From Saccostrea echinata (lineage: Eukaryota): a stretch of DNA of 64,000 nt. The notes below the pieces were generated by a model. It searched no databases and had not been told where the DNA came from. It was given only the letters and a program-made list of their open reading frames with translations. The stretch is taken from assembly GCF_033153115.1 (NCBI RefSeq), contig NW_026889777.1:13082001-13146000 (forward strand), in the 5' to 3' direction. Within the stretch, counting starts at the first letter, position 1, and every line of letters begins with the position of its first letter. Made by a program: the position numbers and the translations under genes. Positions 9,824 to 62,517 of this stretch are shown in pieces.

Positions 9824-12800
9824 ATGGCGGTAAATCAACAAAGAAAGCGAGCAATGAAGCGCCTTATGCAGGACTATGAAGAACTGCAGAGGGAACCCGT
9901 CGAGAACGTATCAGCCATGCCTCTAGACGCCAACGTATTTGAATGGCACTGCAACTTCAAGCACGATGACATCATATACCACCTCATTTTATTTTTCACC
10001 GAAAAATACCCGTATGACTCTCCAAGCGCAGAGTTTGTTCCCGTAGGTTTCCGCTACAACAGTGGCGCCACCATGCCGGGAAAGGTTGGAACTAAAGTGT
10101 GTTTGAATATCTTTTCTGACTTTGCTTATATTCACACTGAATGGAAAGATGAAAAATCTGTTGGCTGGTCTCCCGGATATACCGTACAGACCATTCTTCT
10201 TAATGTGGTGGCTTTCCTGGCGGAGACACAGTCGGGTGACTACGCTTGGATGAAGGACGCGTCGGACCATAACCGAAAGATTTCGAAAGGATTCAAATGT
10301 GATTGTGGTCACACTTATGCGAAACCACTTCCGGCATTTGACGCGGGTAAACCCGAAAAAAGCGGGAAGAAAACAGACAAAAAAGGCAAGCAAACTAAAG
10401 CGGCAGCAAGTGGCGAATCTGTGCCAGACATAATAGATTATGCTTCAAAGGAGCGTTTTGACAAATCAGTAAAACCAAAGTCGAACGATGATCTGTTTGG
10501 ATACGGTTTAATAGTATCAGGTCCCCCACATAGACCAGCTCTCACAACACCCTGCGAATTCATTAAACTGGAATCGTTCGAAGCAATGAAAAAAGCAATA
10601 GGCACTGTCAAAAGTGTTATGAAGGAAGATATCAAATTCTTCCTCCCAATGTATATCACTCCCAACCATGGCTCTATGATTAAAGAGACTTTTGAGAAAT
10701 GCTTAAACGAGGTGGCAGCTATTTTACCAAAATGTAAGCCAAACAAAACTCCCCTTAAGGACCTCATCATTAAGGTCATACCGAACTTGATGAGCGCCAC
10801 AGTGGTGGAATTTTCTAAAGGGACACAACACACAAGCGAAAACAGTCTTAACGGCTACTTTTCTCTACATAGATTGTTTCTGTGGGCACTGGACACGTAC
10901 CCTGAATTACAGGAGGAGATCGACTCCAGACTAAAGGTTTATTTAATCGCTATTTCTTAAGTTATCTGATCATTAACCAGTAAACATGTGTATTTACAAA
11001 CACATCTTTTCAAATCACTTGAAGTCTTACTACATGTATAAATACCTCTAGGTTTTTATCGATGACGTGAGTGAAAGAAGCAAAAAGGCATGTCCGCACA
11101 TTGGAGAATGGTTGATGCTTCTAGCAGCTTCATTCAAGTACAGGTTGGTATCCGATTTTGGAATATCCTTAATCAGGAACATTTTTGACGTACAAAATAT
11201 CAAGGAAAAAAGGTATAAATACAAATTAGTTCCAGTACGGGTATTAATTTGTCAATTCATTGTAGGTGGCAGGATGCTGCTTGGGCTTATCTGTCAGAAA
11301 GCTTCAAGAGAAACGTTATGTGGTACGTCAAAGAGGACGCTAAACTGGGCATGCTCGACACTGACAAAGACTATCGCATCCGGGAAACACTTCAGAGGAC
11401 TCTGGTTAGCCGGAAGCTGTTAGCCTTCCAGGTAAGTTGGCGGCTTCTAATAAGTCTTCGTAGTGGACAAATATATCATTTATTTGACATATATACTGGG
11501 AATTTAAACTATGTTAAAATGAAAGGTTATGTATGTTTTAATGACATTGTATACGAATCAACATTTTACCGTCTATTCGCTGGAAAGTTGTAATAAAATG
11601 CATATTATATTACTTTAAAGAGAAAATGGTGGGGGAGGGGACGGAATCTGGAAAATCTTAATGTTGTCCATCCTTTGGCGTTCTTTTAATCAGCAATTAA
11701 CTAAGACATTTAAAAATTCACAAAATAGCTCTCTCAATTTACCCATTGATGTATTAAAATTGAGAGACCTAAAGTGTTCCTTTTCATAATATTACAAAAA
11801 ATAATTCTGAGTAACGTTATAATATATAAATGTTAATTTGAAGAGTTATTGATCCTTGCTGAGGAAGTTACATCCTTGAATTAAATACTTTTTGTCCATT
11901 GCAGTTAATGTAGTGCAAATATAAAATAAATCACTTGTTTTAAATTTTGTTCTCATAGCCTTAAATAATACTGTTTATTTAACAGGTGCTCTTTCTGGAC
12001 ATTGCCATGCCCAAAGGAAAATCGAAAGCAGACCTGGTCAAGCGATACGATAATAACTTAGGCTTCCCTACGGAAGAAATGGTGAAACAGATGAAGGAAT
12101 CTGTCCAGCTCATCAATAACATGAAAACCTACTCTGATTGGTTTAACGTAAGTCATGTGACAATAATTCTTAGAAGTGAGATTTACCCTTATTAGTTAGG
12201 TAACTATGCCCAGGTTTCCAGTATACTATATTAATATGCAAAATCCACATACATGTCTTAAAAATAATTGAATACATTGATCCAATAAGAAGCTGTGAAG
12301 TATATCGAAAACTGGAATTAAATTGGTGCATACCAATGTGTTAAAGAATATTACATGTACATGTATATGGCTGAAAAAATTATTATGTATATTTTTTAAA
12401 GCTATATATGGCGTATCTGAGCTAAAAAATAAAAATAAGAGACTGAGTGTAGATAAACATGATATATGTTATTTACATTCAATTTAAATTTTCACCGATT
12501 TTGAACTTGAATAACCTCACGTTTCTATGGTCAAATTGACCTTAAACTATGGAACGCCGGGACTGTCTTATATGAGGATTAAACATTATATGCAGTGTTC
12601 TCTTCATTATATGTGGTATTATTTTAATTATATGAAGTAGTTTTTACAGTTTATCGTGTGCAACTTCCATTATATACAGTACTTCTTTCATTATATGATG
12701 TAGATGTGTCATTATATTATGTACATCTATCATTATATGAGGTGTTTTTATCATTATATGAGGTGCTTTTAACATTATATGCGGTAGATCTACCATTATA

Positions 12801-14025
12801 TGAAGTGAACACAACAATATATTATGTACTTCTCACATTTTATACAGTATATTCATCATGATATGTAGTATTTCTGTTATTATGATGATGCTGATCGTTA
12901 AATATTATGTCCGGTCCTGTTAGCATTCCGTGCGGTAGATTTTGCATTTCGTTATGATGTAGACACAGTATTATATGCGGTGCTTTCTTCTTTATGTGTA
13001 TGATCTTTCGGAAGCTACCTTTCGGAACTCTCTGTTAAAAATTCAGTACCTTGAGAACTCCGACCTTTCCTGTTGAATTCAGTACAATAAAAGCCTGCGT
13101 ATATAACAATTAATGCTCCGTGAACAGGTTAAAATGTTTTTTTAAAGATATGAAGTAGGGTAATAGAGTAAAATAAAATCCATTCTATTACATGGTATGA
13201 AGTAAAGAGAGAGAGGGGGGTTGATGATAGAAATATTTTCGGAGTGGAAAAAAATTTGAGGCATTTTCTATCTTTTTTGTGAACATTATGACTTTCAAAA
13301 AGAGTCATATCATATATAGGACAATCAATGTCAAAAAAGATAATAAAAAACAGGGGCGTCGGCAAGAATTTGACGTTGGGGAGGCGAACTGGATCGAAAA
13401 GGGGGGAGGGGTCCTAACCAACTAAAATAAGACTTCAGCCAAAATCTTGATATTTTTATTTTCTGATTAATAAAGAACAATTAAACATGCAACCAAAATA
13501 AAATGTTTTATGTGATTTAAGTTATATTTACTATAGATTTAAAAAACCGGAATATTTTTAATTAGCTAGGAGCTGGTGTTTGTTTGTTTGTTTGTTTGTT
13601 TTTTTTGTTTGTTTGTTTTTTTCGAAACGGCATAGAAAGAACTTTGAAGGGTTTATGAGGTAAAGATTAAAATACATATAATTTTCTATTATTGTATAAT
13701 ATTTTTTGTTACTCGCCGAAAGAATGCATAGTTATGAAATTAAAAATGAACAGGGTGATTAATCCTTCATAATCCCCCCATTTTTGAAATGCAGAAATGT
13801 GTATGACATTAAAAAAAATCATCTGAAGTTGTTTTAAATAGTATTTGTTACCCAGTATTTTAGTATATTGCTTTAATTTTAATAGCTTACAACTTCGATT
13901 CATCAAAGATTTCCAAACATCGATAGACCAGTTCATTAGACAATGAACAGGCCTGTTATACGCGGGGGGAAGGTGTCAGGAAGGGGTGCTCTAATTTTTG
14001 ACCTATTTCTCCACTTTTTCTGAGA

Positions 14026-14068
<43 letters not shown>

Positions 14069-16838
14069 TAAGTTTCGATATGTAAAAATTCACTAACTTA
14101 GACGCTGCTGCCCCCCCCCCCCTTTTCATCTTTCATACACACTTTCTGTTGCTGTCAGGTAGAAATCGGGTAAATTCGAAAAGAAAAAAATTCCGACAAC
14201 TTAGAGAGCCCCCCCCCCCCAAAAAAAATAGAATTTCCAAAAACGTTGCTAGCTGTGGGCCTGATGAAGAATTTGTAGCAAACTTGCACGTAGAGAGATG
14301 GATACCATGCTTATTGTTTACAAACGCCGGGTACAGGTATATACTAGTAATTATACACGTACATGTACATCCCAATTTGCGTCTGTGTAAACAATAATAT
14401 ATATATATAGATATAGATATAGATATATACGGTATGACTGGGTAATTTTATCACATATCATTTTAGAAATAAAATCTTGAAGTACAACCCACGACTCAAT
14501 ACATTTTCTGTTCTGAAAATCGTTTATCTTTTCCTGATACATTACATAACATTCACACAGTATTTAACTAAAGACAATTTCAGCAATTTTTTTTATACGC
14601 CATAGTTTAACAATTAATACTATGGAACAATAAAATTATTTCAGTAATAAGTGCATCTCTCTCTCTCTCTCTCGTTGTAAACTACAGAAGTATTGATATG
14701 ACTTCGAAATTCCTTTAATATAGGGATAAATATTGTGTGGTATGTGATTATTCCGCGATGCTTTGGCTGACGTGTGGTTGATTACCAATTATTAAAGAAA
14801 ACCCAAAATCATTAAGAATTTTTATATCTATAAGAACGAAAAAAGGTAGAACTTTCTAAATCTAACAAAGGGGGTTCCGAAAGGTAACTTCCGAAAGATC
14901 ATACACATAAAGAAGAAAGCACCGCATATAATACTGTGTCTACATCATAACGAAATGCAAAATCTACCGCACGGAATGCTAACAGGACCGGACATAATAT
15001 TTAACGATCAGCATCATCATAATAACAGAAATACTACATATCATGATGAATATACTGTATATAATGTGAGAAGTACATAATATATTTTTGTGTTTACTGC
15101 ATATAATGTTAGATCTACCGCATATAATGTTAAAAGCACCTCATATAATGATAAAAACACCTCATATAATGATAGATGTACATAATATAATGACACATCT
15201 ACATCATATAATGAAAGAAGTACTGTATATAATAGAAGTTGCACACGATAAACTGTAAAAACTACTTCATATAATTAAAATAATACCACATATAATGAAG
15301 AGAACACTGCATATAATGTTTAATCCTCATATAAGACAGTCCCGGCGTTCCATATTAAACTGTGTCAGTTATTTAAATGCGGAGTCGGTAAATAAATCGG
15401 TTATTGTTTTAAATTTCTAATATCTTTGAAACGTGATTGATTTTAATTGTGTAATTTACAGGAAAGTCCTTCCTTTATATAAAGTAATAAAACAAATAGA
15501 AAGATCTTTTTAATTTTAGTTAGTCTGAACTTATAAAAAAAAAATACGCCATATATGACTTTAATGCAAAGAGTTCTATGTATTGAAATTATTTTTTTAG
15601 GTCCTGAAGATAAAGCCCCTCCGAGATGATGAGGTATTTGATAAGCTGGTGTCCGCGGTCCAGTACGCTATCGATACGGACGGATACCACTGGACATTTT
15701 GGAAGACGGGGGGAGGCTGGGGGGAGGTCCTCCGTAGATATAAACCTTACAAAAAGAAAGAAGGTAAGTACAGGTTAGTCCGAAATATCTGACGTTTTCC
15801 AAGCTTTTTTCACGATTTTGATATTTTACGTGCCAAGAAAACGTCAGAACCGGTACCATTACGAAAACTGGAAAATTTCACCGTCTCCAACCGGAGCTGA
15901 TTTTCGATACTTGCGAACTGAATTAAATGCCGAACTTACAATTTATCAGTAGCACAATGTTTCTAGTACTCACCAATATCGATGAAAAGACAATATCACT
16001 CCACATTTCGATACAGATCTTTAAAAAAAATGCACGAAATGAAAAGAAAACTCGAGGGTCTGATAAAATGTTTTCACCAGAATGTATATTTCATTTATAA
16101 ACAAACCCATAAAAACGATCGATGTTGGTGAGTACTAAAGGCATTGTACTATTATATAAGTAACTGTTGTGAATTCAGCATTTAATTCGGTTCGCAAGTA
16201 TCGAAAATCAACCCGAGAATGCTGCATCCAGTTGGAGGCGGCGAATTTCCAGTTTTCGTAATGGCGCCGGTTCTGACGTTTTCCTGGCACTTAAAATATC
16301 AAAGTCGTGAAAAAAAGCCTGGAAAACGTCGGATATTTCGGACAGGTCAGCTAGGAGAGGTCCTCCGCAAATAAAAGTTATAAAAAGAAATATGGTAGTA
16401 AGTACAGGTCAGCTAGGCGCTTATTTTAAACAACTATTGAAGATATGCGTGGGGATTTGCATTTGCACATCGATGTGTTCGCTTCAACAAATCTTGAACA
16501 AGGCAATTAAAATTCGTCATTCTTCTGATTTCTTTATGTTTAATTGATATTTTTTATTAGACAAAGACACTGGGAAGAAAAAGGCTGACGATGACGATGT
16601 AGAGCCTAGCGCAAAGAAGAAGAAACCTGCCTTGAAAAAGGAAGATTCGAAGCCAAAAGGGCGCGGACGAGGGGGAAAAGCAGCCGCGGCGGCAGCTAAA
16701 CCCGCGGGTAGAGGGGCTAAGAAAGCCGAGGAAGAGCCGAAAGCACCTGTGGGTAGAGGTCGGGGGCGTGGGCAGAAACGAAAGGCCGAAGATCCTGCAC
16801 CTGTGGGCCGGGGACGTGGAGGAAAAAAGAAGAAATAA
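9824..16838 (+). CDS. Non-canonical ubiquitin-conjugating enzyme (UBC/E2) with a large C-terminal domain and GRG/Lys-rich tail, ~657 aa
   Basis: Exons 9824-10936, 11052-11143, 11266-11431, 11986-12147, 15601-15763, 16561-16838; all introns GT-AG with frame maintained. UBC hallmarks: KRLMQDYEEL, NVFEWH, YPYDSP, catalytic KVCLNIF, GWSPGYTVQTILL. Confidence 0.88.
12400..15560. mobile_element. TTAA-flanked MITE (Kolobok-like, ~350 bp) split by a nested 2.8-kb insertion
   Basis: TTAA at 12396-12399 and 15561-15564. Ends agctatatatggcgtat / atacgccatatatgact. An uninterrupted copy lies inverted at 20229-20576. Confidence 0.85.
12548..15354. mobile_element. Non-autonomous DNA transposon with ~480-bp TIRs containing 21-bp tandem repeats; TATGG termini and 6-bp TSD (IS3EU-like)
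   Basis: 12548-13027 is the near-perfect reverse complement of ~14875-15354. TSD ttaaac at 12542-12547 and 15355-15360. The empty site in the 20229-20576 copy has a single ttaaac. Confidence 0.88.
15778..16343. mobile_element. Foldback MITE with ~205-225 bp inverted arms
   Basis: gtccgaaatatctgacgttttcc... / ...ggaaaacgtcggatatttcggac. Flanked by aggtta/aggtca, a possible 6-bp TSD. Confidence 0.85.
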
Positions 16839-19800
16839 TATTTAACAATTAAAGTACATGTATACAGAGTTATGTATTTAGGTTATTATATACTAAGTAC
16901 TCATTCGTCTGAATATATAGATGAGCCTTTGAAATGTAAACTGCGATGGACGCCTAAGTTGAAAAAAAGAGGTTTCCTATAGGATGTAGTAGTTTTTAGT
17001 ATTCCTCTGCTATTAGTTTGACAATGTTGTTTTGTTTTTGTTTTTGTTTGGTTTTTTTTTTTTTTTTTTGTAGCAAATTTGGAGTATATTTGTATTTATT
17101 TTTATCACCAAGATAATAAAATGTACATGGTAGCTTATGACAGTTTTATTTACGTTTCAGCTTGTAATGAATATCATGCGAGTCTTGCACCCATATGCAC
17201 AATGATGTTTAACATGTGCCATTTTTTGTAGTTAACTAAATAAAAATAAGCTCGTATATGCCTTATATATTTTTTCCCGAAATTAAATTTAGGGATAGGT
17301 TGTTGTAAGTAATTTCAAAAAATAATTTTCCCGACACACTACATGCCATATGAAAAGATTATCCAAATCAATCACCGTGCCTTAATGTCTGTGTGTTAAT
17401 TATGTTCCCCAAACGAACTCTTCTTTTTCTTCTTCTTTTCCTTACTTTTTTCCGCGAGAATTCTTGAAAATTATTCATCCGATTGAGATGAAACCTTTTT
17501 AGGATTAATAAGCATGTTGTGTAGGTGTTTGGAATGAAGGTCATTTTGTGTGCACATGCTTTCACGTGCGCGCGATGTGTGAAATTAGTGATATATTTGA
17601 AATAGCTTTAACTTTCTTATTTTTGATGAAATACTTTGACACTCAGTATATATGTATATAATATATAAGTGCTGTTGACAAGATGACGTAGATGAATTGG
17701 CACATGCGCTTTGCTCTGGTCGGCTGATACAAAAATCTTAATGCTAGTAAGAAAATCCAAGAATTAGAAAATATACTGAAATCCGATTGGCTAATACTCA
17801 TATGTCTTTGTTGGCGTTGTTTTCCGAAAAATACTTCGGAAAATGAAATGTAAATCTATAATACTTCTGAATTGGCTTATTTTACGAAGCTTGTAGGGAA
17901 TGGAGAACCAAAAAATGAAGTTGGGGGAGGGGGTGTTTGGGAAACAATTACAGTTACAATTAGCACTAGGTTAAATGATGACAAAATTCATTTTTCATTT
18001 GTGATAAGAAAATGTTGCAATGTTCAGTGTTGAATTTTGCCAGTGATGTAATTAGCTCAAAGTTTGGTTCTGAGAGTTACCACTAGTCATGCTTGCAAGG
18101 GATTCATCGTCAGATTTCCACAAATCATGCGCGGATCCATGTAGTATTTTTTTTCTAGGGTAAGAGGGAGAGGTCCACACCAGCTCAAAAATATCGAACT
18201 CAAATTTTTTTTTGGATAAGTAAAAGAAAAATTAAAGTGCACCTCCAACGGAAGGCACATGATACGCCCGTCAAATGTTTATTAATTATTATAATCAGAA
18301 GAGTGTTCATTGAAGAAAAACATGTCAACCTTGGTACAAAGATTTCAATGATTTTTTTTTTCCCATACCTAATATTGATTAGCATCTCATATATATTCCA
18401 TATATTTCATGCTTTAGTTATTAATAAGAACAAAAAGTACGCTGTACATATCTCGACTGATTGTGTTAAAGTTACACAAATGCCCAATCTGCAGCTTTGT
18501 TTATTGTATTTTTCTGAATGATGAACAATGCCCCAGCATATTAAAACGTCAAAATGCTAATCATTATGGTCATTATTAGACATTAAGACTGGCTCTTAAG
18601 TGTATCAATCTGTCATCATCACGAGAAATAGCCCTCTGCATTTTTTTTTTTTTTTTTTTTGAGATATAGAAACTAAAATAAAAATATTAGATTTTACAAT
18701 ATCAAATTAATTTTGATAACTTTTTACCAAATTATTTTTTAAATAAAGGCTAGCCATCAAGAACTGTTTTAATTTGACAGACACTATCAATTGCAATTAA
18801 CCGGTCAGATCCCTCTGCCCAATTCCAAAGAGGTATAGAAAACATCTGCTTGCTTGATCAAAGATGCTCTAACATAAATGATTAAGACAGTCTTCTTACA
18901 TTGAACTCAAAAATTCATCTTTAACTTGACAGACTCTTATCAAAATGTCTCACCATGGCTTACTTTCATGGGAAAAGTAAAATTTCTCGTTATTCCTAGA
19001 AACAATAGAAATACTAGTATTATATTTCATATATAAAGCTTTACAGTACATCATGAATAAAAGTGTATTTTCTTGATGTAAAATTTATGAATAAGGTTAC
19101 TGCAATACTCTTACATGGTGCAACACACTTCTACATAACATGCATTAACTGGCTAAGTTTGCTGATTCTAAGTCTAATAGTTTTTCAGTTACGAGTCGGG
19201 CAGGGTTTTTGTCATATTTGGCCATCTCATATAATCTTCAATAAAAGTCACGGTGGCCTAGTTTTAATGCGCGACACACTTTCCTTCTACCCGAGATGTA
19301 TCAGCTTACAAAATTTGATTATGATATTCTAGGCCTCATAGTACACGTATTTAAGTTCGGAGCCAGATATGAAATAGTTAGCAGTCGGGCGAACAGGAAT
19401 TTCATACCATAAAACGACATGTCTTAAGACAGGTGTGTTAAAATTATAAGCGCACAAACAGCTTGCATAAACCCAATAATTTTTTTTTTCGGTGTGTGTG
19501 TTGGGGGGGGGGGGGGAGGGGGTCTCTTTACTTCATATGTACATATACTACATGTAATGTGTTGCTCTCGATCGATCCTTACCCCACTATTTTTAGGGAG
19601 GGTGTCCGTTCGTTTCCAAGTGTGTGTGTGTGGGGGGGGGGGGGGGTTAAGGTCATTTTTGGTTGCTTTGCATAGAAATTTAATAACTATTTTCATTCAT
19701 CACCCGGTAACGAGTGAGAAGAGACGAGATCCTACTATGTATAGGATCCTCTATCTCTCTGTTTTAATGTAATTCCTCAAGGAGGTATACCGCAATAAAT

Positions 19801-49623: not shown

Positions 49624-50292
49624 TCAATAATATTCCTGAAAAATAAAAAAGAAAGATGAACCATTACATGCAGAAACCATCAAATTAGTGATATTCTGGA
49701 GGAAAAATAAAAAATGCAAATTTGCCACCATATGAACAGTTATCATTCTCCTTATTACCTTGTATCCTACACCAGATAAGATTCCTCCTTTACCACCGTA
49801 GTTACCGCCCATCCATCCTTTTCCTCCAACCATCACTCCTCCATATCCATAATTATCCAAGCTACTGCCCATTAATCCTTTTCCTCCAAGGATGATTCCT
49901 CCGAGTCCTTTACCACCGTATTTACTGCCCATCAATCCTTTTCCTCCAACCATCACTCCTCCATATCCATAATTATCCCAGCTACTGCCCATTAATCCTT
50001 TTCCTCCAAGGATGATTCCTCCGAGTCCTTTACCACCGTAGTTACCGCCCATCAATTCTTTTCCTCCAACCATCACTCCTCCATATCCATAATTATCCCA
50101 GCTACTGCCCATTAATCCTTTTCCTCCAAGGATGACTCCTCCGAGTCCTTTACCATGTCCTACAAGTCCTTTGCCACCATAGATGATTCCTCCATATTCT
50201 TGGCCGACATTTAATCCACCGTAGGAGGGATTATAGTAGTCATCACACACGGCTACAGAGAACAGAGCCAGACAACACAGCAGCTTGATCAT
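49624..50292 (-). CDS. Secreted Gly/Tyr/Lys/Met-rich repeat protein (shematrin/prisilkin-like structural protein), copy 1, ~181 aa
   Basis: Coding exons 50292-49759 and 49635-49624. Signal peptide MIKLLCCLALFSVAVC, three 40-aa repeats, C-terminus GYK-EYY. Non-coding exon 1 ends at 52134. Confidence 0.85.
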   Translation of the reverse strand: MIKLLCCLALFSVAVCDDYYNPSYGGLNVGQEYGGIIYGGKGLVGHGKGLGGVILGGKGLMGSSWDNYGYGGVMVGGKELMGGNYGGKGLGGIILGGKGLMGSSWDNYGYGGVMVGGKGLMGSKYGGKGLGGIILGGKGLMGSSLDNYGYGGVMVGGKGWMGGNYGGKGGILSGVGYKVIRRMITVHMVANLHFLFFLQNITNLMVSACNGSSFFFIFQEYY

Positions 50293-50560
50293 CCTTTGAA
50301 AAAATAAGTTTTTTTTTACAGGAAGCATACAAGCCAATATTGCAGGGTATTTAGAGTTAAGTTGGAAAATTCATGTTTTAGAGATACAATCCTCAATCGT
50401 CGGGAAATCATTTTTTTTTTAGAATGAACGTGATATAAGTTTTAAATCTTTTTATGAAGTATATATGATAATTGTTTCAAATTGACAAGAGGTTGAAACA
50501 CATGTGTACATAGGACAATTTCTCAAAATTAGTATCTTCAGCTCAGAAAATTATGCACAG

Positions 50561-52920: not shown

Positions 52921-55900
52921 TGACAATGACAATGACTTTATTCTAATTAAACTGGTTACAGTTGTAGAGAATAATAATTAAAACAAATATAAATGACAAT
53001 GCGCATTGCGTGGTAAAATTAACCAGGAGAGCGAACTCTCTCGATAATCTTTTGTACAGATTTACATAGCTTCATCAACTGTTTCTTTTTTGTAATTTTA
53101 AACAGATTCTCAAATTTGTATACATTCGGATTCACCGAATAATAATTAGATAAGTATAATGCATGACCTTGCTTGTTTTAATATTGCGTCAGTACAACTG
53201 AATTATTTTTATAATAAAACTCATTACCAATTTCTTTACAATTACATAGATTACAGATTCTTTATTCTCTAGATATACCGTGCCAGCTCCCTGTTTCAAT
53301 AGGGAGCCTAGCGTTACCAGTTCTAAATTTACAAAAAATTCTCAGAAATTTCACTGGTAAAATGTCAAAATATTTCTCAAAAGACTCTTAAATAACCTAT
53401 AATTAAGTGCTTTTGGTGAATTGGACATTTCACTATACCATGACTGTTTAAATTGATCTATAAGAGTATGATATACTTTACTTTTTAACCACTTGACATT
53501 AATCGTATTAAACTATATGATAAACCACATTCATTTAGAATTTTTTGTACAAATTTACACCATGGTGTTTCGTTTTGATTCATATTTAATGTCAGGAGTT
53601 TTGAAGATATTTTGAATTGTTTGATGCAATCAACTTAGCCCAAAAAGTAATAATTCTTACCTAAATATTAATCAACAATAGAAATCTTCCCAGTTCACCG
53701 TATACCATTGAATTAGGAGTAGATGACTTCACATTTAAGATATGTTTACGAAATTTAAGATGTAGTGTTTCAATTAACAACGACTTATTAAAACCACATA
53801 CTTCACAACCGTATAACAAAATTGGTTTAACAACTTTATCAAAGAGGTCAAGCTTGCATTTAATTTCATAGATAAATTGTGTCTTCTACATTTGCTAACT
53901 ACTCTATACATTGCTCTTGTTGCTTTGTCATACAAATCGATCTTTTATATTCAAATGAAATGACGCACTTTAACAAAATGTAACACAAAGATATCGGTAC
54001 TCGCTAACAACTTCCAATGGTACTTCATTATCTAAAAAGTAAAACTATATTGTGGTTCACTTTACCTCTGCCAAAAATAATAATTTTAGTTTTGTTAAAA
54101 TTCACCTTTAAATTCCATTTTTCACAATATTTAGAAAAAATATCTAATTGATGCTAAAACCATGTTGGTCTTATGAGAGCGAAATAGTATCATCTGCATA
54201 TAACAAGACATACAGTTTCATATATATAAGTAATACTCTTTTCTGTTTTATCTGACAATGTTTATAAACCATTAACATCATTTACAACAAGAAATTCTTC
54301 TAAATCATTGAGATATAGTGAAAAAAGAATAGGTGACAGGTTTTCCACCTGTCTTACCCCAACAGTACAAGGGAAAAAATCAGAGCTTTGTCCATTACAA
54401 AACACTTTGGACTTAATATTTTTATACCTATCTTTAATTATTTTAAAACACTTTCCATCTATATTAATCAACAAAATCTTGTTCCAAAGGCCAATATGCC
54501 AGACAGATTCAAAAGCCTTTTCAAAGTCAATAAATGCACGATATAATTTCTTCTTCAATGATTTGTAAATTTCTATTATAGAATATAAAGAATATATATG
54601 ATCCTGAGTGGAAAAATATTTGCGGAAACCAGCTTGATTTTCCAGTATAACTTCATATAAGAGAAATGCTTTCTGTATATTTACTTATTCTTTCATTCAG
54701 AACAGAAGTAAACATTTTACTCAGACAACTAATTAAGGTAATTGGCCTATAATTCTTTGGATCAGTACCATCACCTTATTTTTATATATGGGCATTATAT
54801 TACCAACCAACCATTGTGATGGGAATATACCTGACTCAAAAATTTTGTTAGATAAACATACAAATAGTTTAAGTAGGCTTACTGTGGTATTTCTGTGGTA
54901 TTTTTAATATATTCATCAAATACTTTATCTTCACCACACGCATTATCATTTTTAAGCATGCGTATACATTTAGATACCTCTTCATATGTAAAAGGTTGAT
55001 TTATATCATGATTTAATTCTACATTTGAGAGAGTTTGAAGTTTCCTCTGTTAATACATAATCGCTTTCATTATCTGAAGTTAGATTACCACATTCCTTAA
55101 AAAATTTTAAAAAATTCTCAATGTGAGCATTACATTTTGATTTACTCTCATTAGTATTTAGAGTTTTCCAATATTCTTTAAGATTTGTTGTGCGTAAAAA
55201 ATTCAATTTCTTTGTCATTTCCGATCTGTGTTTATTTCTTGCACACTTAAAGCTGAACATGACTCGTAAATAGGCATACGCCATTTTCGATAATATAATC
55301 TTAGATATCAGCATCAGGATATACTCTTCGCATTCGTTACACCTGACTGCTCTATTGTCACGGGTATCGGCGTGGAATGGCGACCCGTGTTCGTGCTGGT
55401 TATCTTGCATTACTTTTTTTTTTTTTTTTTTTACATTTTATTGCAGTTACGTATATTTGTGTTTGTAGACTGCACTGACCTGTGCAACTGTTGTAAATCT
55501 CTTTGGTATCTTACTTTCCTGCATTAGAAGAAGTATTACAGTTATTTTTGTCGCTACCAAGTGCTATATAGCATACGCCCGTATACACCGGTGACGATTG
55601 ATTACACTGAACAGAGACCAAGTGAGCGGCTTTATATACAGGGGCCCTCAGATATAGCGCAAGTCCAATTGAATATGGCGGACAGATTCTTTTTACGAAG
55701 CGTGTTCAGCTTTAAGTTTATATTTATACTTTTTCCCAGGTTCATACAGATATACAACTTCCATATTTTTTATACATCCTTTTTGCTATTCTATAGTTTT
55801 GCCTTGCAATCTTACATTCAGTTGTAGACCATGGTTTTTTAAAACTACAGTGTTTCTTTCTTATACTTGTATTCACAACACAACAACTCTTTGAGTACCA

Positions 55901-58582
55901 AAAGTTTCTCTAGCACTTTCCACTAAGATTTCACAAGTTTGACTAACTATTTATTCAATAAATTCCTGTGATGTATTTTCTGTTTTTCAATTTTCTATTT
56001 CACATTCTAATTGTAAAATTTTGTCTGACTTTAAATCTACCGAAAGTTTATAAGATAATAAGCCTTCATTGTTCCATTTTCGTACAATTTCAAAATCTTG
56101 TTCTTTAAATGGCGAACTATTGCTTGAACAAAGAAAATTTCCAAATAATAGACACAACAAAATAAGGCTATGAATATCAGATAAAAAAGATGAAAATGGT
56201 AATACTTGCATATCTTGTTCATACTTTAAGAAATTTATATTGGCTATACAATAATCTACAACACTAGTCTGCTTACAGGTTAATTCTCCATTAATATCCC
56301 CCTTTGTTCTACCATTCAAGATATAACAATTTTTACATATATCATTGAGTTTTCTTCCATATTGATTAATTGTTTTATCTTTTGATTTTCTTTCTATTGA
56401 AAAACCATACTTTTCTAAATTAAACACATCTTGACTTTCTTCTAGTATTATGTCTCTTTCTAATGCAGTTAAATCATTTTCAGTAAAAGAAATACAATGT
56501 ATAGTCTTTCTCGATGGACGTTCTACTATTAAAATCACCTAATATACATACACAGCTATATTCAGTTAACATCATAATGACCTCTTTTTCAATTTCCTCA
56601 AAAAAAAGTTGTTGATGAAAAAACGTGAATTACATGGGGGTACGTGAACATTTCCAACTACAACATGTTTATCAATTCCCAATGAACTTTCATTAATTTT
56701 TAACCATAAGATTTGGTCACATTCATTTTCAATAATGGATACATTAGGTGCATAATTATTTTGGACATAAATAACTAATCCACCTGATTTTCGAAATGAT
56801 AACACAGATCTATGTTTACTAAAAGCTGTGTAATTTTCTAAATTAATTAAATCTGCACTATCTGTTTTTGTTTCCGAAAGACATATGATATCATATTTAT
56901 TGATGAAATTTGTAAATTCTTTATCCTGTAATTTTGAAGTAAGCCTACACACATTTAGACTGATTATTTTAAGTTTCTTTTCCTTTTCGAGAGAGATATT
57001 CTTGCTTGTTATGGTTCCTGGATGGATTGTAGACTGCTCTCCATGGTGATCCTAATAGCCGTTTCCTTCAGTAAGCCTTTCCATTGCCTGTGGTACAAGT
57101 GGAACAACGTTAGGGTTTGCTTGCCTGTTTTCTCTGGTTAGCCCCTCCATTAACTGTGGTGGTGATGATACAACATTGAATTTAGCTTGAGTTCTGTATC
57201 GTGGTGTTCTTCCATAGGTTGACATACTGCTATTACTTTCCATTTGAATTCCTGTATTATCACCCACTTTCATGATAAAGGCGGTAATTTCTTCTGCTTC
57301 TACTCGTTTCCCATCTACCACTAGTTTGGTTGGTATTTCATCAATTTCCACTCTTTTCCCGTCTATAATTAATTTATCCATCACAAGTTTGGCTTTTTTT
57401 CCCTTTTTTTTAATTTTATATTTTTATTATTTTTTTTTTTTTTTGCTTTCTTGTATTAAGGGTAAAGTTGTTTCCTTCTTTCTGCAACTTCTCTCGGGAA
57501 TTGCTCGTTTTTTTCTTATGGTTTTTCTCGTAACTTGTTCGGTGCGGCGTTTCTGACGGATTTTCGATCTTTGAAACGAACAAATTTCGCAACTATTGGC
57601 CGATGTTTAAATAATGATTTTCTACCAATTCTATGGACACGGTGAAACTCAATGTCTGACATAATTTCTAGTTCATTTTTTATGAAGGCTTTAATTACTT
57701 CTTCTGCGTTTTCTTCTGCTTCTTCTTTTATTCCGTCAAAAACCAAGTTGTCCCTCATTGAACTCATTTGTAAATCTAAATTGAGTTCTCTTAATTCACT
57801 GACTTCTGTTTTCAGTGCTTGAATCTCTTTAACTGACTTCTTGATTACATTTACCTCTTGTTGACAATCCTCGTGTAGTTTCCTATGAAGGTCAATCCGT
57901 TTTCTAGGTCGTTGACCTTGGCTTTCATTTCTTTCGCACAGTCTAATTCTACGTTAATAGTGTGCACATTTTTTTCTAGAACATCTAGCCTGTTCTCATT
58001 TATAGTAAGCTTATCTAGCTTTCGGTCGATTGTCTCTAATTTATCCACAAGGGTTTTCATAACGTCTTGCATATCACCCTGTGCTGGTTCCCGCGCACTA
58101 GCCGAATTGTTGATTTGACCTACATTTCCCATTCCCATGTTATTCGTAGTTGGGGAGACATAGCTAACAAATTGCCCGTGTGGGGGCCACATGAGCCCAT
58201 GAGGAGAATACGTAATAAATTGGGGGTTTCCCTGATAGCCCTGATAGCTTGGTGTAGACTGTTGTATTGGTATTAAGTTATTACTTACATTATTGCTATT
58301 ATGTACATTGTTTTCCATTGTGGGAGCTATAACTGGTGCTCTATTTGTTTTTCTTGGTATCGACACGGTTGAGTGACTTACATGAAATTTTTCCTCGCTT
58401 TCACCACTTATGTTACCATCTGAATTCTTCCTTTTCTTTGTTTCCTTTTTCTTCTTGGCTTTAGGCATTCTTTAGAACGTCTTCACTTATCTTTCTAATC
58501 ATATCCCGCCGGTGATTACACTTATATTTATCAAAATTCGGAGCAAAACTTGAAGTCCGACATTATTAACCCACGCATGCGC
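52921..58582 (-). mobile_element. Full-length degenerate non-LTR retrotransposon (CR1/L2-group LINE)
   Basis: ORF1 ~58468-57052: coiled coil plus RRM-like DNLVFDGIKE...HRIGR...RPIVAKF. ORF2 has APE motifs (DIICLSET, SVVDY, SDIH) and RT motifs (FIDFEKAF, GVRQ.ENLSP, YADD at ~54189-54200). AATAAA plus a (TTGTCA)n tail at 52921-52952. Absent at the paralogous site (46586). Confidence 0.92.
55251..55711. mobile_element. Kolobok-like MITE nested in LINE ORF2
   Basis: TTAA at 55247-55250 and 55712-55715. TIR agctgaacatgactcgtaaa / tttacgaagcgtgttcagct. Confidence 0.85.
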
Positions 58583-58757
58583 CTTGATTGAAATAATGCT
58601 TAGCAGGTTGGGAGTGAAGGAGTTGAAATTCAATGTTAGAATTTTGTTTTGTAATACAGAATTCGAGAGAAGTTGCGTGTAGGTTTTGGTGATTTCATGA
58701 TATAATGTTATATGATGTTATGTTTTATGGTATTCTTGATTTATGAAAATGTTCTCT

Positions 58758-58907
58758 NNNNNNNNNNNNNNNNNNNNNNNNNNNNNNNNNNNNNNNNNNN
58801 NNNNNNNNNNNNNNNNNNNNNNNNNNNNNNNNNNNNNNNNNNNNNNNNNNNNNNNNNNNNNNNNNNNNNNNNNNNNNNNNNNNNNNNNNNNNNNNNNNNN
58901 NNNNNNN
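58758..58907. other. Assembly gap
   Basis: Run of N. Confidence 0.99.
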
Positions 58908-59264
58908 AGGAAAATTTATATTTTAATATCCAATGTGTGTTTTGCCTTTCACCAAGCGAGAGAGAGAGAGAGAGAGAGAGTAAAATCACTATATTGAGGT
59001 TGCAAAAATACGTACAAGTATATGATATGTTCTGCTGGAAAAGAGTTGGAATGCTTTCATTTGATGTATATGTAAATGTAAAAATCATAATCGTAATCTA
59101 CATAACTATTTTGTATTAATTGCACCAGAATACTTATGTTTACATCTCATGTTTTATACAGTATTCCCAGTATTTTTTGAATGTTTTTCAGTATCACTTA
59201 AACATGAAATAGTCTAGTCAATCTATCAAAAAAAATTGAGCTCAACCTCCTACATCTTACAACA

Positions 59265-59817: not shown

Positions 59818-61727
59818 TAAAAATTATTACTTTTACGATTATTAAGTTCGAGTTTATTTGAAATATTTGTAGAAAAAAGTCTAGAAAAAAATCTAATGAA
59901 AGGAAAGCATAAGTTTGGCATGATTTAATGATCTATGGAAATTACTACAGAAAAAGGGGCTTAACCTTGTAAATCTATCCATATAATAGAAGAGAAATGC
60001 TCATTTTACAAAATAGTGTGATATGGTTTAAAGTGTTTGATATTATCAAACGATCATTTGTTACATAGATAATATCAATATTTAATGAATGTTTTTAATA
60101 GAATTATATATTTGTTTTTTGGTCATGAATTTTTTTTGAATAATAACTTTAAAAACAATAGTCAGTGAATACCGTTTTTCTAAAGGGGGCTATAAGTTTC
60201 AATTTTCCTTGAGATTTTATTTTAGTGTGTAAAAATAATTTTATTCCTATATTTCTGTATCCTAATATTAAATGATGTTGAAAAACAAACACATTTAGAT
60301 TTTAAAGACAATATGTTTCCTATATTCTGAAGATTGGCCTCAGCAAAAAAAATTTATCATGAAGGGGAAAATGCAGCAGACTCAGAACTGGGCTGAAGTA
60401 TCTGTTATAATGTTTTTTGCCGAGTATAAAAGTACCATTCTGTGGAGTATAATTCACTTCCTCTTCTTCATGATGGAATAGTGCTCTAATAAGACATGAA
60501 CTACATGTAAAATTCACTGTATGGGCAAGAGTTATGCCCCCTTTTCGTGTTTATGTACCCCCAAATAATGCTTTCCACCTCTCAAATTTTATTAGAAATA
60601 TTTTGTGGTTACTTTCGTTTATTTATTAATTTTTTTAAACACTTTCTGTTACAATTAGTTTGATATTAAATGATAAATTGACTAGACTAAAATAAGTGTT
60701 TCACATGTGTAATCAGTTTGAAGGAATCCTCCAGTTTGAGTTGGAAGTGATGTTTAATTAAATCTTTTTATCTTGATCATAGATCACCTATTACAAGACA
60801 GTAATGCATTCGTTTGAAGATGTTTTATATTTATTATCTGTTTGAATGACCTGGGCTGTGTTTTATATTTTTGTTGAGAAATAAAAATTTATAAACCATA
60901 TTCTAACCATGTGACAATCATCAGATTTGAAAAATGGCATTGTCGCTAAATATGTCATCCTGGATAAATAAAGGCTTTATTTTAGTATTATTGGAAATGG
61001 GTGCTTTATGTTTTTGATGACCTTTTTCTTTCTTTCTTTTTTAATTTTTGGCTTTTTAAGAAATGCTTGCTTTGTAGCACACCCTACTGAAAAAAAAAAT
61101 TGGATGTCCCCCTCCCCTCGAACTGAAAATGCTTCCTACGGGACTGTTTTCGTGGGAAAATAAGAGAGATATTTATAGTAGCATTAAGATTAATGCAAGG
61201 CTATGCTTGCACATGCGCTTGATTCTGAATTGCTAATACTTTAAGGACTGTCTGTCTATAATGTAGGAATACATTACCTATATTCAAAATGAAGCTCCAG
61301 ACAGCTCAATATTACGTTATGTATGCATTATATGTAGGTAAACAAGTCCTAGAGAATTGGGAATATGAGAGGCAATGAGATTATAACATTAAAATATTCC
61401 AGATTCCAAATCCAATTTGATATTTATAAGACATTTTCATCGATTATTAATCCTAATGCATAGGGAAAAAGTTCCTATTTTAAAAATTTCATTTAAGTAC
61501 AAAGTTTATGCATGTACAGTTCTTTCCCGATAAGCAGACATACGTAAAGTCTATGATTATTTTACTGTAGTACTGCAATATAGACGTTTTTATCCATCTA
61601 CACGTACTTTATATATAGCTCAGTGATATATATAAGAAGTTTCTCGTTTAATATCAATAGTTTATTTTATTTACAGAATACATGACAATGACAATGTCGG
61701 CGTAAACACTTTCATCCATTTAAGTTT

Positions 61728-62517
61728 TCAATAATAATCCTGAAAAAAAAAGAAAGAAAGATGAACTGTTACATGCAGAAACCATCAAATTAGTAATATT
61801 CTGGAGGAAAAATAAAAAATGCAAATTTGCCACCATATGAACAGTTATCGTTCTCCTTATTACCTTGAATCCTACACCAGAATAGATTCCTCCTTTACCA
61901 CCATAGTTACCGCCCATCAATCCTTTTCCTCCAACCATCACTCCTCCATATCCATAATTATCCCAGCTACTACCCATTAATCCTTTGCCTCCAAGGATGA
62001 TTCCTCCGAGTCCTTTACCACCGTAGTTACCGCCCATCCATCCTTTTCCTCCAACCATCACTCCTCCATATCCATAATTATCCCAGCTACTACCCATTAA
62101 TCCTTTGCCTCCAAGGATGATTCCTCCGAGTCCTTTACCACCGTAGTTACCGCCAATCAAACCTTTTCCTCCAACCATCATTCCTCCATATCCATAACCA
62201 TCCCATCTACCGCCCATTAATCCTTTGCCTCCAAGGATGATTCCTCCGAGTCCTTTACCACCGTAGTTACCGCCCATCCATCCTTTTCCTCCAACCATCA
62301 CTCCTCCATATCCATAATTATCCCAGCTACTGCCCATTAATCCTTTTCCTCCAAGGATGACTCCTCCCAGTCCTTTACCATGTCCTACAAGTCCTTTGCC
62401 ACCATAGACGATTCCTCCATATCCTTGGCCGACATTTAATCCACCGTAGGAGGGATTATAGTAGTCATCACACACGGCTACAGAGAACAGAGCCAGACAA
62501 CACAGCAGCTTGATCAT
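61728..62517 (-). CDS. Secreted Gly/Tyr/Lys/Met-rich repeat protein, copy 2, ~221 aa
   Basis: Coding exons 62517-61864 and 61739-61728. Same signal peptide, four 40-aa repeats, C-terminus GFK-DYY. Non-coding exon 1 ends at 63414. Confidence 0.85.

What the first reader, a model, noticed from the sequence alone, without database searches (positions are those of the whole stretch)
9824..16838. HPN-less E2 fused to a large uncharacterised domain, unlike the standard animal E2 set
Seen: the UBC fold keeps the catalytic Cys but has no HPN motif; PVGFRYNSGATMPGKVGTKVCLNIFSDF reads more like the Ubc6/UBE2J CLSISDF region. It is followed by CDCGH and a ~370-aa domain with motifs LFGYGL, FFLPMYI...H, HTSENSLNGYFSLHRL, RSKKACPHIG, ESFKRNVMW and YRI..T....SRKLLAFQ. 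From memory, to be verified: this motif series occurs in extended UBC proteins of fungi, amoebae/protists and possibly giant viruses, and I do not recognise it from vertebrate, fly or worm E2s. The UBC domain sits in a single 1.1-kb exon, unusual for host E2 genes. Inference: a self-sufficient E2/E3-like enzyme, possibly acting on non-lysine acceptors, either retained patchily or acquired horizontally.
Basis: partly seen in the sequence, partly recalled or inferred. Interest (0 to 1): 0.75.

Follow-up and report, generated by a model that had tools for sequence, protein, structure and literature searches.

The report
Oyster E2 enzyme fused to E3-like module
This is a real, expressed oyster gene for a ubiquitin-conjugating enzyme that lacks the usual HPN motif and is fused to a domain predicted to fold like the ligase module of the giant protein UBR4, so it may carry out both steps of ubiquitin attachment on its own.

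Summary
Window 9824-16838 (+) is a six-exon, 657-codon gene. It is identical to NCBI's "uncharacterized protein LOC133194137 [Saccostrea echinata]". One spliced contig of about 2.2 kb carries it in each of 4 public runs.

The protein has these parts:
- A UBC fold with Cys93 and no HPN motif; the aligned triplet is Met84-Pro85-Gly86.
- A Ubc6/UBE2J-like CLxIxSDF...H stretch.
- A CxCGH knuckle and a disordered linker.
- A roughly 330-residue module that no Pfam model covers.
- A K/RG-rich tail.

The family is large: 905 clusters at E<=1e-30. It occurs in Amoebozoa, a malawimonad, giant viruses and rotifers. Among animals, the close form is seen only in molluscs, a brachiopod and an annelid. The lophotrochozoan clade is sister to an Amoebozoa-containing clade (100/100).

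Best reading: a single-chain E2-E3 hybrid of a new architecture. Activity, acceptor chemistry and origin (horizontal transfer or patchy retention) remain untested.

The parts
9824..10936 (+). Coding exon 1 (371 codons, ATG at 9824). It holds the UBC domain, the Zn-knuckle, the linker, the RING-like subdomain and the first helices of the UZI-like bundle.
   Evidence: ORF and GT donor at 10937. The joint 10936>11052 is seen in 4 of 4 runs. The exon is 100% identical to P0228.
9824..10294 (+). UBC (E2) fold, residues 1-157.
10073..10081 (+). Met84-Pro85-Gly86, the positional equivalent of the HPN triad. The His and Asn are lost.
   Evidence: 22 of 197 aligned members read HPN in these columns. 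Gly86 is present in 53 of 53 members of the close subclade.
10100..10102 (+). Cys93, the presumed thioester-forming cysteine.
   Evidence: It aligns with the active-site Cys of UBE2J2 and is Cys in 190 of 197 members.
10133..10144 (+). His104-Thr-Glu-Trp107, 11 residues after Cys93. His104 aligns with the His of the UBE2J2 'DFHP' stretch.
   Evidence: The phmmer alignment to 2f4w_A shows the correspondence. H104, E106 and W107 are each present in 53 of 53 members of the close subclade.
10298..10312 (+). Cys159-Asp-Cys161-Gly-His163 knuckle directly after the last UBC helix. It is a presumed zinc site together with residue 205.
   Evidence: C159 occurs in 182, C161 in 174 and H163 in 182 of 197 members. 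The full set plus C or D at position 205 occurs in 155 of 197. Zinc binding is inferred, not shown.
10332..10426 (+). K-rich disordered linker, residues about 170-201.
   Evidence: Block-mean pLDDT is 74, 50 and 60 for residues 171-200, and residues 188-192 are under 50, in the P0228 model. The length varies among members.
10427..10678 (+). RING-like (hemiRING-like) beta-rich subdomain, residues about 202-285. Asp205 stands where UBR4 has Zn ligand Cys4838, if the first aligned residues carry no gap.
   Evidence: The alignments to 8btl_A start at model 202 = UBR4 4835 and at P0005 199 = 4835, which is the same register. 8v0d_A (an E2-RING fusion) aligns over model residues 8-277. Position 205 is C in 140 and D in 45 of 197 members.
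10679..10936 (+). First helices of the UZI-like helical bundle, residues about 286-371. The bundle continues in exons 2-5.
   Evidence: AlphaFold helices H287-298, H311-331, H339-358 and H361-375, with pLDDT above 90. They lie within the 8btl_A alignment.
11052..11143 (+). Coding exon 2 (UZI-like bundle; motif RSKKACPHIGEW with Arg380 and Lys382).
   Evidence: AG/GT splice sites. Joints seen in 4 of 4 runs. R380 is present in 185 and K382 in 194 of 197 members.
11266..11431 (+). Coding exon 3 (UZI-like bundle; Glu413, Arg417, Trp421).
   Evidence: E413 is present in 195, R417 in 194 and W421 in 186 of 197 members.
11986..12147 (+). Coding exon 4 (UZI-like bundle).
15601..15763 (+). Coding exon 5 (end of the UZI-like bundle at about residue 560, then the start of the tail).
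   Evidence: The 8btl_A alignment ends at model residue 535.
16561..16838 (+). Coding exon 6: disordered Lys- and Arg-Gly-rich tail (GRGRG repeats, KRK, KKKK) and the stop codon TAA at 16836-16838.
   Evidence: pLDDT is under 50 for residues 574-657. RG-rich tails occur in 60 of 185 members with a complete C-domain.

Best explanation
The locus encodes a single-chain E2-E3 hybrid.

What is shown. It is a real, spliced, transcribed host gene. The protein has a UBC fold that keeps the active-site Cys93 and lacks HPN. It also has a C-terminal module of about 330 residues whose predicted fold is that of the UBR4 hemiRING-UZI E3 module. That module is modelled docked on the UBC domain where a RING binds its E2.

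What is inferred.
- An E1 loads ubiquitin, or a ubiquitin-like protein, on Cys93.
- The in-cis RING-like/UZI-like module takes the place of a separate E3. It holds or activates the E2~Ub conjugate, as the hemiRING and UZI do for UBE2A in UBR4.
- The CxCGH knuckle, together with the Cys or Asp at position 205, forms a zinc site. This site ties the end of the UBC domain to the RING-like subdomain at the position of the hemiRING's zinc.
- The disordered RG/K-rich tail brings the enzyme to its targets, most likely RNA or ribonucleoprotein or other acidic partners.
- The Asn of HPN is replaced by an invariant Gly, and a His stands after the Cys as in Ubc6/UBE2J2. The acceptor chemistry may therefore differ from lysine-directed E2s.
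For: Gene and expression.
- It equals P0228, 657 aa.
- One contig of 2150-2248 nt in each of 4 of 4 runs (2 studies) carries all five GT..AG joints at the predicted bounds.
- The gene is single copy in its genome.

E2 part.
- PF00179 matches over its cut-off.
- Cys93 is conserved in 190 of 197 members.
- The WSP loop is conserved: W115 in 196 of 197.

E3-like part.
- Two independent models were made: P0005 with 20 rows (pLDDT 77, pTM 0.64) and P0228 with 94 rows (pLDDT 85.9, pTM 0.83).

Docking.
- The UbcH5B-MIB1 RING3 fusion 8v0d_A aligns over model residues 8-277 with 177 residues at 2.3 A. That is the E2 and the RING together.

Conserved ligands.
- C159, C161 and H163 together with C or D at 205 occur in 155 of 197 members.

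Links to RNA-binding parts.
- RG-rich tails occur in 60 of 185 members.
- Other members carry CCCH fingers (3 of 76), an RRM, or a CLU domain.
Against: - No activity was tested.
- No sequence similarity to UBR4 was detected. PF13764 did not match the 13 proteins or pieces scanned at E<=1. It is not among the 25 families listed of 68 for 76 members. The C-domain HMM found nothing in the six-frame pieces of the oyster's own UBR4 and FBXO47 loci: best E 0.78 among 598 pieces.
- The hemiRING's own ligand set (C4838, C4841, H4887, C4890) is not kept as such. By register, position 205 is Asp in this oyster and position 208 is Ser or Thr. I could not read model coordinates, so the proposed zinc site and the docking rest on alignment ranges and secondary structure only.
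- An inter-domain arrangement from AlphaFold can be wrong even at pTM 0.83.
- Loss of the HPN Asn may weaken isopeptide formation.
- A language-model feature search points to the FBXO47 'ARM' domain (scores 0.81-0.85, a lead only). That would fit a partner-binding role as well.
Confidence: 0.6

Rival explanations
1. An ordinary E2 with a partner- or substrate-binding scaffold. In this reading the C-terminal module does not act on the E2~Ub conjugate. It serves as a helical docking platform, as the 'ARM' domain of F-box protein FBXO47 may. The enzyme still needs separate E3s.
For: - 15 of 76 family members carry an F-box-like domain. Where I checked its position (P0071, P0074, P0087), it lies between the UBC domain and this module. 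F-box plus C-domain is the FBXO47 layout and implies work inside an SCF ligase.
- The language-model feature search puts FBXO47 clusters first among named clusters (0.81-0.85; 7 of the ten best share that family).
- The hemiRING zinc ligands are not kept as such.
Against: - The RING-like part is modelled at the RING-binding face of the E2 (8v0d_A).
- PF24467 did not match the 13 proteins or pieces scanned at E<=1. The FBXO47 exons of the same genome found no match to the C-domain HMM.
- The feature scores are under 0.9, which the tool calls a lead only.
Confidence: 0.22
2. A catalytically impaired E2-like regulator. With the HPN Asn gone, the protein may carry or sequester ubiquitin, or block an E1 or E3, rather than transfer it.
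For: HPN is absent, and Gly stands at the Asn position in 53 of 53 members of the close subclade. The Asn is described as stabilising the reaction intermediate in canonical E2s (PMC11649903, passages).
Against: Cys93 is kept in 190 of 197 members, alongside a set of invariant neighbours: H104, E106 and W107 in 53 of 53, and W115 in 196 of 197. E2s that naturally lack HPN (UBE2J, UBE2Q) are active (PMC10971424 and PMC11649903, passages).
Confidence: 0.08
3. Origin by horizontal transfer. This rival concerns the history of the gene, not its mechanism. The lophotrochozoan gene would have been acquired once, before molluscs, brachiopods and annelids split, from an amoebozoan-like eukaryote or a giant virus. 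The alternative is inheritance from the common ancestor with Amoebozoa followed by many losses.
For: - Named close relatives (above 40% identity) are only 21 mollusc genera, Lingula, Dimorphilus, Physarum and Pelomyxa. No other animal, holozoan or fungus is named.
- The lophotrochozoan clade (18 rows, support 99/99) is sister to the clade holding Physarum and Pelomyxa (10 rows, 99/93). The two together have 100/100 support, and the next clade holds a giant-virus gene.
- Giant viruses carry the full architecture.
- Rotifer members sit in a different clade that holds a Homavirus gene.
Against: - The two clades are reciprocally monophyletic. The animals are not nested inside the sampled Amoebozoa, and this is also what vertical descent predicts.
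- The gene has five GT-AG introns and is single copy.
- Within the clade, the order is roughly that of the species.
- Most relatives are unnamed records, so absence from other animals is not shown.
- The tree has no independent root.
Confidence: 0.4

Closest known systems
UBR4 hemiRING-UZI E3 module (PDB 8btl; Barnsby-Greer et al. 2024, PMC10873205)
   Different: - There is no detectable sequence similarity.
- The C2HC zinc ligand set is not kept. Three likely ligands instead come from a CxCGH knuckle upstream of a disordered loop.
- The E2 is fused in cis, not recruited in trans.
- The protein has 657 residues, whereas UBR4 is a 574 kDa protein.
- The oyster has a separate true UBR4 gene.
Ubc6 / UBE2J1 / UBE2J2 (non-canonical E2s)
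   Same: There is no HPN motif. The active-site stretch CL(S/N)I.SDF is followed by a His. UBE2J2 is the best match by sequence among solved structures (E 3e-08).
   Different: - There is no C-terminal membrane anchor.
- The loop before the Cys is 8 residues longer, and there are 10 extra residues (3 + 7) between the SDF stretch and the WSP loop, in the alignment.
- UBE2G2 scores almost the same (E 1.3e-07) and is the best fold match.
- The C-terminal E3-like module is absent from the J family.
E2/E3 hybrid enzymes UBE2O and BIRC6
   Same: The concept is the same: one polypeptide holds a UBC domain together with parts that replace a separate E3.
Giant-virus 'E2 ubiquitin-conjugating enzymes' with long C-termini (Hyperionvirus A0A3G5A9Q2, Tetraselmis virus 1 A0A2P0VP69, Homavirus AYV82335.1, IMG/VR locus L001)
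   Same: They share the two-domain architecture over the full length. The Hyperionvirus model gives E 2.2e-31 and TM 0.82 over 575 columns. L001 is 31% identical over residues 10-511 and also has an RG-rich tail.
   Different: They are 16-31% identical and lie in other clades of the tree. L001 lacks the CxCGH knuckle. Their records name them only as E2s and give no function.
FBXO47 (F-box plus the PF24467 'ARM_FBXO47' domain)
   Same: This is a lead only. It is the nearest named clusters by language-model features (0.81-0.85). Some protist family members have an F-box directly before the same C-domain.
   Different: PF24467 did not match the family members scanned individually. The oyster's own FBXO47 exons do not match the C-domain HMM. 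No structure comparison was possible.

Membership tests
UBC / E2 superfamily (Pfam PF00179) | Match to the family model over its curated cut-off | tested here: met
   48.2 bits against a cut-off of 27, residues 13-157. 75 of 76 relatives also match.
UBC / E2 superfamily (Pfam PF00179) | Active-site cysteine at the conserved position | tested here: met
   Cys93 aligns with the Cys of UBE2J2 and is Cys in 190 of 197 members.
UBC / E2 superfamily (Pfam PF00179) | HPN triad before the cysteine (canonical E2s) | tested here: not met
   The aligned triplet is M84-P85-G86, while 22 of 197 members read HPN in these columns.
UBC / E2 superfamily (Pfam PF00179) | Thioester formation with ubiquitin or a ubiquitin-like protein | not testable with these tools
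   This needs an E1 charging assay.
UBE2J / Ubc6 family | HPN absent, with CLSI.DF followed by His after the cysteine | tested here: met
   CLNIFSDFAYIH aligns with LCLSI-TDF---H of UBE2J2.
UBE2J / Ubc6 family | C-terminal transmembrane anchor | tested here: not met
   The C-terminus is a K/RG-rich stretch with no hydrophobic segment (sequence). It is modelled as disordered.
UBE2J / Ubc6 family | Clearly closest E2 family by sequence | tested here: inconclusive
   UBE2J2 scores E 3e-08 and UBE2G2 scores E 1.3e-07. UBE2G2 is the best fold match.
UBR4-type hemiRING-UZI E3 module | Fold: RING-like beta subdomain packed on a bundle of about 11 helices | tested here: met
UBR4-type hemiRING-UZI E3 module | C2HC zinc site (Cys4838, Cys4841, His4887, Cys4890) | tested here: not met
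   By the register of both alignments, position 205 (Asp here; Cys in 140 and Asp in 45 of 197) stands at Cys4838. Position 208 (Ser or Thr) stands at Cys4841. The other two ligands could not be placed. A different ligand set (C159, C161, H163 and residue 205) is proposed but not shown.
UBR4-type hemiRING-UZI E3 module | Sequence membership (Pfam PF13764 / InterPro IPR025704) | tested here: not met
   No match at E<=1. The C-domain HMM scored the oyster UBR4 exon pieces at best E 0.78.
UBR4-type hemiRING-UZI E3 module | Binds an E2 and activates E2~Ub (di-glycine element of the UZI) | not testable with these tools
   Only the modelled docking is available (8v0d_A, 177 residues at 2.3 A). No residue-level alignment was available.
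UBE2O / BIRC6 E2-E3 hybrids | Orthology beyond the UBC domain | tested here: not met
FBXO47 (PF24467) | Match to the family model | tested here: not met
   No match at E<=1 in the proteins scanned individually and none at E<=0.001 in 8 long relatives. There are only feature-search leads at 0.81-0.85.

The most novel reading that the evidence does not exclude
This is a family of autonomous single-chain ubiquitin ligases: an E2 with a UBR-type RING-like/UZI module in cis. Its HPN-less, His-bearing active site would transfer ubiquitin to hydroxyl groups rather than lysines. The acceptors could be on RNA or other non-protein molecules brought in by the RG-rich tail. The family would have moved between giant viruses, amoebae and the ancestor of molluscs, brachiopods and annelids. 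The orphan C-terminal domain of the meiotic F-box protein FBXO47 would be a relative of the same module.
Probability: 0.07. Interest if true: 0.9.

Novelty: new variant of a known kind. Interest (0 to 1): 0.7.

Why it matters
The UBR4 hemiRING-UZI module was described in 2024 and is listed as a class with one member in a survey of the human system (PMC13015453, passages). Here the same fold turns up fused to an E2 in several hundred protein clusters from protists, giant viruses and one branch of animals.

That would give three things:
- A compact, 65-kDa natural E2-E3 fusion in which E2 activation by this module can be studied.
- A new architecture beside UBE2O and BIRC6.
- A third natural group of E2s without HPN in which to test what sets acceptor chemistry.

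It also gives a function to test for a conserved mollusc gene that every named record I saw calls uncharacterised or gives only a generic E2 name. Finally, it offers a clean case for asking whether giant viruses carried ubiquitin machinery between distant eukaryotes.

Tried and rejected
- **Pfam on every exon piece and on 15 full-length relatives.** Only UQ_con was significant, with F-box, VWA, LRR, RRM, CCCH or CLU in some long forms. No model covers the C-domain.
- **Foldseek of the whole model against the PDB.** The list filled with E2s and was useless for the C-domain. VIA-align over all cluster representatives solved this.
- **Sequence link to UBR4 and FBXO47.** I located both genes in the window's own genome. 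I then searched their six-frame pieces, piece by piece, with an HMM of the C-domain. The best E was 0.78 among 598 pieces, so nothing was found.
- **FBXO47.** It remains a lead from two feature searches, made with two proteins that are 74% identical and so not independent.
- **A C-domain-only model.** It was not made. The zinc site and the docking therefore rest on ranges, DSSP strings and conservation.
- **Orthology to UBE2O, BIRC6 or UBE2Q.** Rejected, because only UBC-level matches were found.
- **Contamination.** Rejected. The gene has five introns and lies at about 13.09 Mb on contig C28 of the genome (C28:13091824-13092936), among host repeats.
- **Literature.** Eight searches were run. 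Those aimed at this question found no paper describing an E2 fused to a UZI or hemiRING-like module, nor this mollusc gene. The two classical E2 surveys could not be read: Burroughs 2008 (PMC2701696) is not held, and the Michelle 2009 survey was not found. They may mention the family. Supplementary files were not consulted.
- **Joining exons.** The window was searched exon by exon and with exon 1 alone.

Full report
**What is there.** The + strand of 9824-16838 holds a gene of six coding exons:
- exon 1, 9824-10936
- exon 2, 11052-11143
- exon 3, 11266-11431
- exon 4, 11986-12147
- exon 5, 15601-15763
- exon 6, 16561-16838

All introns are GT-AG. The coding sequence is 1971 nt, or 657 codons, and ends in TAA at 16836-16838. 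The window was searched exon by exon and with exon 1 alone.

A database protein, P0228, is 657 residues long and is named by its source "uncharacterized protein LOC133194137 [Saccostrea echinata]". It is 100% identical to each exon piece within these bounds. My model is therefore the annotated one.

In each of 4 of 4 public runs laid on 10850-16849 (2 studies, at most 3 samples), one contig of 2150-2248 nt carries all five joints at exactly these positions. Three of the four contigs have no differing letters. The runs are listed only as "RNA?" by guess, but a spliced form shows a transcript. The gene is single copy in its 923-Mb genome.

All quoted motifs are present.
- Pfam UQ_con matches residues 13-157 (E 1.1e-12). 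No other Pfam model matches any exon piece at E<=1, nor the C-terminal domain of 8 full-length relatives.
- There is no HPN. In an HMM-based alignment of 197 family members of at least 450 residues, the columns that read HPN in 22 members read Met84-Pro85-Gly86 here. In the 53 members that share the oyster's "AEF" signature, Gly86 is invariant.
- Cys93 aligns with the active-site cysteine of UBE2J2 and is Cys in 190 of 197.
- The stretch after it, CLNIFSDFAYIH, aligns with LCLSI-TDF---H of UBE2J2. UBE2J2 is the best hit by sequence among solved structures (E 3e-08), with UBE2G2 close behind at 1.3e-07.
- His104, Glu106 and Trp107 are invariant in the 53-member subclade.

**The uncharacterised domain.** I made two AlphaFold models.
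- Model 1 was of orthologue P0005 (73% identical to exon 1), from a 20-row alignment: pLDDT 77.2, pTM 0.64.
- Model 2 was of P0228 itself, from a 94-row alignment: pLDDT 85.9, pTM 0.83, with most 10-residue blocks between residues 201 and 540 above 95.

Foldseek against the PDB returned only E2s. VIA-align 2 against 48,161 cluster representatives put 8btl_A first for both models. 8btl_A is the E3 module of human UBR4 crystallised with UBE2A.

According to the paper on that structure (PMC10873205; I read the passages returned):
- Residues 4835-4948 are a "hemiRING" that binds one zinc through Cys4838, Cys4841, His4887 and Cys4890 and docks UBE2A.
- Residues from there to 5183 are the "UZI" bundle of 11 helices.
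- Its relatives are predicted in UBR1-3.

That fusion protein was built to mimic the E2-RING complex (bioRxiv 10.1101/2024.03.01.582834, passages). I could not confirm from the text that the RING of a chain sits on the E2 of the same chain.

Taken at face value, the RING-like subdomain of the oyster protein is modelled on the UBC domain where a RING binds its E2. The WSP loop of the E2 is kept (W115 in 196 of 197 members); that this loop is used for RING contact is recalled from knowledge of UbcH5.

**Possible metal site.** Right after the last UBC helix stands F-x-C159-D-C161-G-H163. In most relatives this is C-x-x-C-G-H.
- Across 197 members, C159 is present in 182, C161 in 174 and H163 in 182.
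- Position 205 is Cys in 140 and Asp in 45; the oyster has Asp.
- The full set occurs in 155 of 197 members.
- 44 of the 45 members with Asp at 205 have the intact knuckle.

Both fold alignments begin three residues before position 205, at UBR4 4835. If there is no gap there, position 205 stands at Cys4838 and Ser/Thr208 stands at Cys4841. DSSP shows single bridges at residues 158 and 164 and at 204 and 211.

I propose a zinc site made of the knuckle and residue 205, at the place of the hemiRING's zinc, tying the two halves together across the disordered loop of residues 170-200. This is inference, because I had no coordinates. H42 and H53 on the UBC sheet are also conserved (180 and 185 of 197), and I have no explanation for that.

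**Family and distribution.**
- *Size.* A profile of 20 full-length members, scored against 1.84 billion representatives, found 5526 proteins at E<=0.001, 2233 at <=1e-10 and 905 at <=1e-30. The weaker hits are likely plain E2s.
- *Architectures.* Among the best 150 are many proteins of 520-680 residues with the same layout. There are also long forms with added parts. Of 8 long forms scanned, 3 have an F-box-like domain between the UBC and the C-domain, one of them also VWA. Others carry LRR plus RRM, or CLU plus LRR plus CCCH. Of 76 scanned, 15 have F-box-like and 3 have CCCH.
- *HPN.* A literal HPN occurs in 48 of 214 proteins held at that point. The motif was therefore lost within the family.
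- *Named records.* These are 21 mollusc genera (bivalves, gastropods, a chiton), Lingula, the annelid Dimorphilus, Rotaria, Physarum, Pelomyxa, Arcella, Pyxidicula, the malawimonad Gefionella and Homavirus.
- *Giant viruses.* IMG/VR gave one locus, on a 530-kb contig of 22-26% GC. Its neighbours include D5-like primase, ankyrin, RNase T and AAA genes, as in giant viruses. Foldseek against viral models gave full-length matches in Hyperionvirus (E 2.2e-31, TM 0.82), Terrestrivirus and Tetraselmis virus 1.
- *Not seen.* No fungal, vertebrate, arthropod, nematode or cnidarian record appeared among named hits. This held even with Physarum as the query. Most records are unnamed, however, and the word-based searches see only part of the family.

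**Tree.** A careful maximum-likelihood tree (48 rows, 547 columns) gives the following:
- The lophotrochozoan clade has 18 rows and support 99/99.
- A sister clade of 10 rows holds Physarum and Pelomyxa, with support 99/93.
- The two together have support 100/100.
- A clade of 16 rows with the IMG/VR virus gene comes next (100/100).
- Gefionella and the HPN/F-box forms lie outside.

A quick tree of 102 rows agrees. It puts the Rotaria genes in another clade that holds the Homavirus gene.

The animals are not nested inside the sampled Amoebozoa, and the order inside the animal clade is roughly that of the species. One old transfer and vertical descent with many losses both fit. I put transfer at about 0.4.

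**How it most likely works.**
- *Shown:* a transcribed gene; a UBC fold with the cysteine; a predicted hemiRING-UZI-like fold; a confident single-body model.
- *Inferred:* E1 loads Cys93. The cis module does for this E2 what hemiRING and UZI do for UBE2A. The zinc site locks the two halves together. The RG/K-rich tail targets the enzyme, perhaps to RNA or ribonucleoprotein.

On the tail: the oyster's has 16 RG/GR dipeptides in its last 70 residues, and such tails occur in 60 of 185 members. Other members carry CCCH, RRM or CLU parts instead.

E2s that lack HPN, namely UBE2J and UBE2Q, modify hydroxyl groups. In Ubc6 a His after the cysteine is proposed as a general base (PMC11649903 and PMC10971424, passages). 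The oyster protein shares both traits, so non-lysine acceptors are plausible but untested.

**What it is not.**
- It is not UBR4. The oyster has that gene elsewhere, with 12 exon matches to PF13764.
- It is not FBXO47, which is also elsewhere.
- It is not UBE2O, BIRC6 or UBE2Q.
- It fails sequence membership in PF13764 and PF24467.

The FBXO47 likeness from the feature search (0.81-0.85), together with the F-box forms, is a lead worth a structure comparison.

**Novelty.** Every named record I saw calls the protein uncharacterised or gives it only a generic E2-type name. My literature searches found no description of an E2 fused to this module (passages read). Two classical E2 surveys could not be read. 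I rate it a new variant of a known kind, the E2-E3 hybrid.

**Limits.**
- There was no assay and no model coordinates.
- The fold evidence comes from predicted models and an in-house aligner.
- Supplementary files were not seen.

Noticed in passing
window 12548-15354 (intron 4): A 2.8-kb foldback element lies here. Its arms, 12548-13046 and 14856-15354, are 499 nt long and 97% complementary. The left arm (12579-12890) holds an array of 12 copies of a 21-nt repeat; the right arm was not listed separately. Other, deeper contigs of the same runs cover parts of it. Two contigs of run X4 skip 12513>15369 and 12519>15358 with other letters between.
   Followed up: partly
window 15805-16315 (intron 5): Two nested inverted repeats lie here: 15805-15874 with 16246-16315 (93% complementary), and 15898-15941 with 16167-16210 (91%). 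This looks like a small MITE-like insert. By eye, the stretch near 16356-16410 resembles the 3' end of exon 5 with its donor.
   Followed up: partly
window 49624-50337 (-) and 61720-62517 (-): Two open reading frames encode near-identical glycine-rich repeat proteins (GGKGLMGSSWDNYGYGGVMVGGKG units). Both have the same hydrophobic N-terminus, MIKLLCCLALFSVAVC, which suggests a pair of secreted structural proteins.
   Followed up: no
window 55006-58468 (-): There is a row of open reading frames of 110-205 residues on the minus strand. From recall, one of them (56572-56952) looks like the endonuclease part of a non-LTR retrotransposon. This was not tested.
   Followed up: no
window about 58750-58950: There is a run of N (X in both strands' reading frames).
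   Followed up: no
L001 4956-6614 (IMG/VR contig of 530 kb): A giant-virus gene has the same E2 plus C-domain layout and an RG-rich tail, but no CxCGH knuckle. It lies beside D5-like primase, ankyrin, 2OG oxygenase, dsRNA-binding, S41 peptidase, RNase T and AAA genes.
   Followed up: partly
proteins P0061, P0062, P0067, P0069: The rotifer (Rotaria) members are only 24-26% identical to the oyster protein. In the quick tree they sit in a different 23-row clade that also holds a Homavirus gene, so rotifers may have obtained theirs separately.
   Followed up: partly
proteins P0071, P0074, P0087 and 15 of 76 members of alignment A2: Protist forms carry an F-box-like domain between the UBC domain and the UBR4-like module. 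Some also keep HPN (P0087, at residue 71). An E2 fused to an F-box would place an E2 inside an SCF-type ligase. The F-box plus C-domain part has the same layout as FBXO47.
   Followed up: partly
residues His42 and His53 of the protein (window 9947-9949 and 9980-9982): Two histidines on neighbouring strands of the UBC sheet are conserved in 180 and 185 of 197 members. They occur together with Cys93 in 174 members. Their role is unexplained. They could be a second metal site or a contact for the knuckle.
   Followed up: partly
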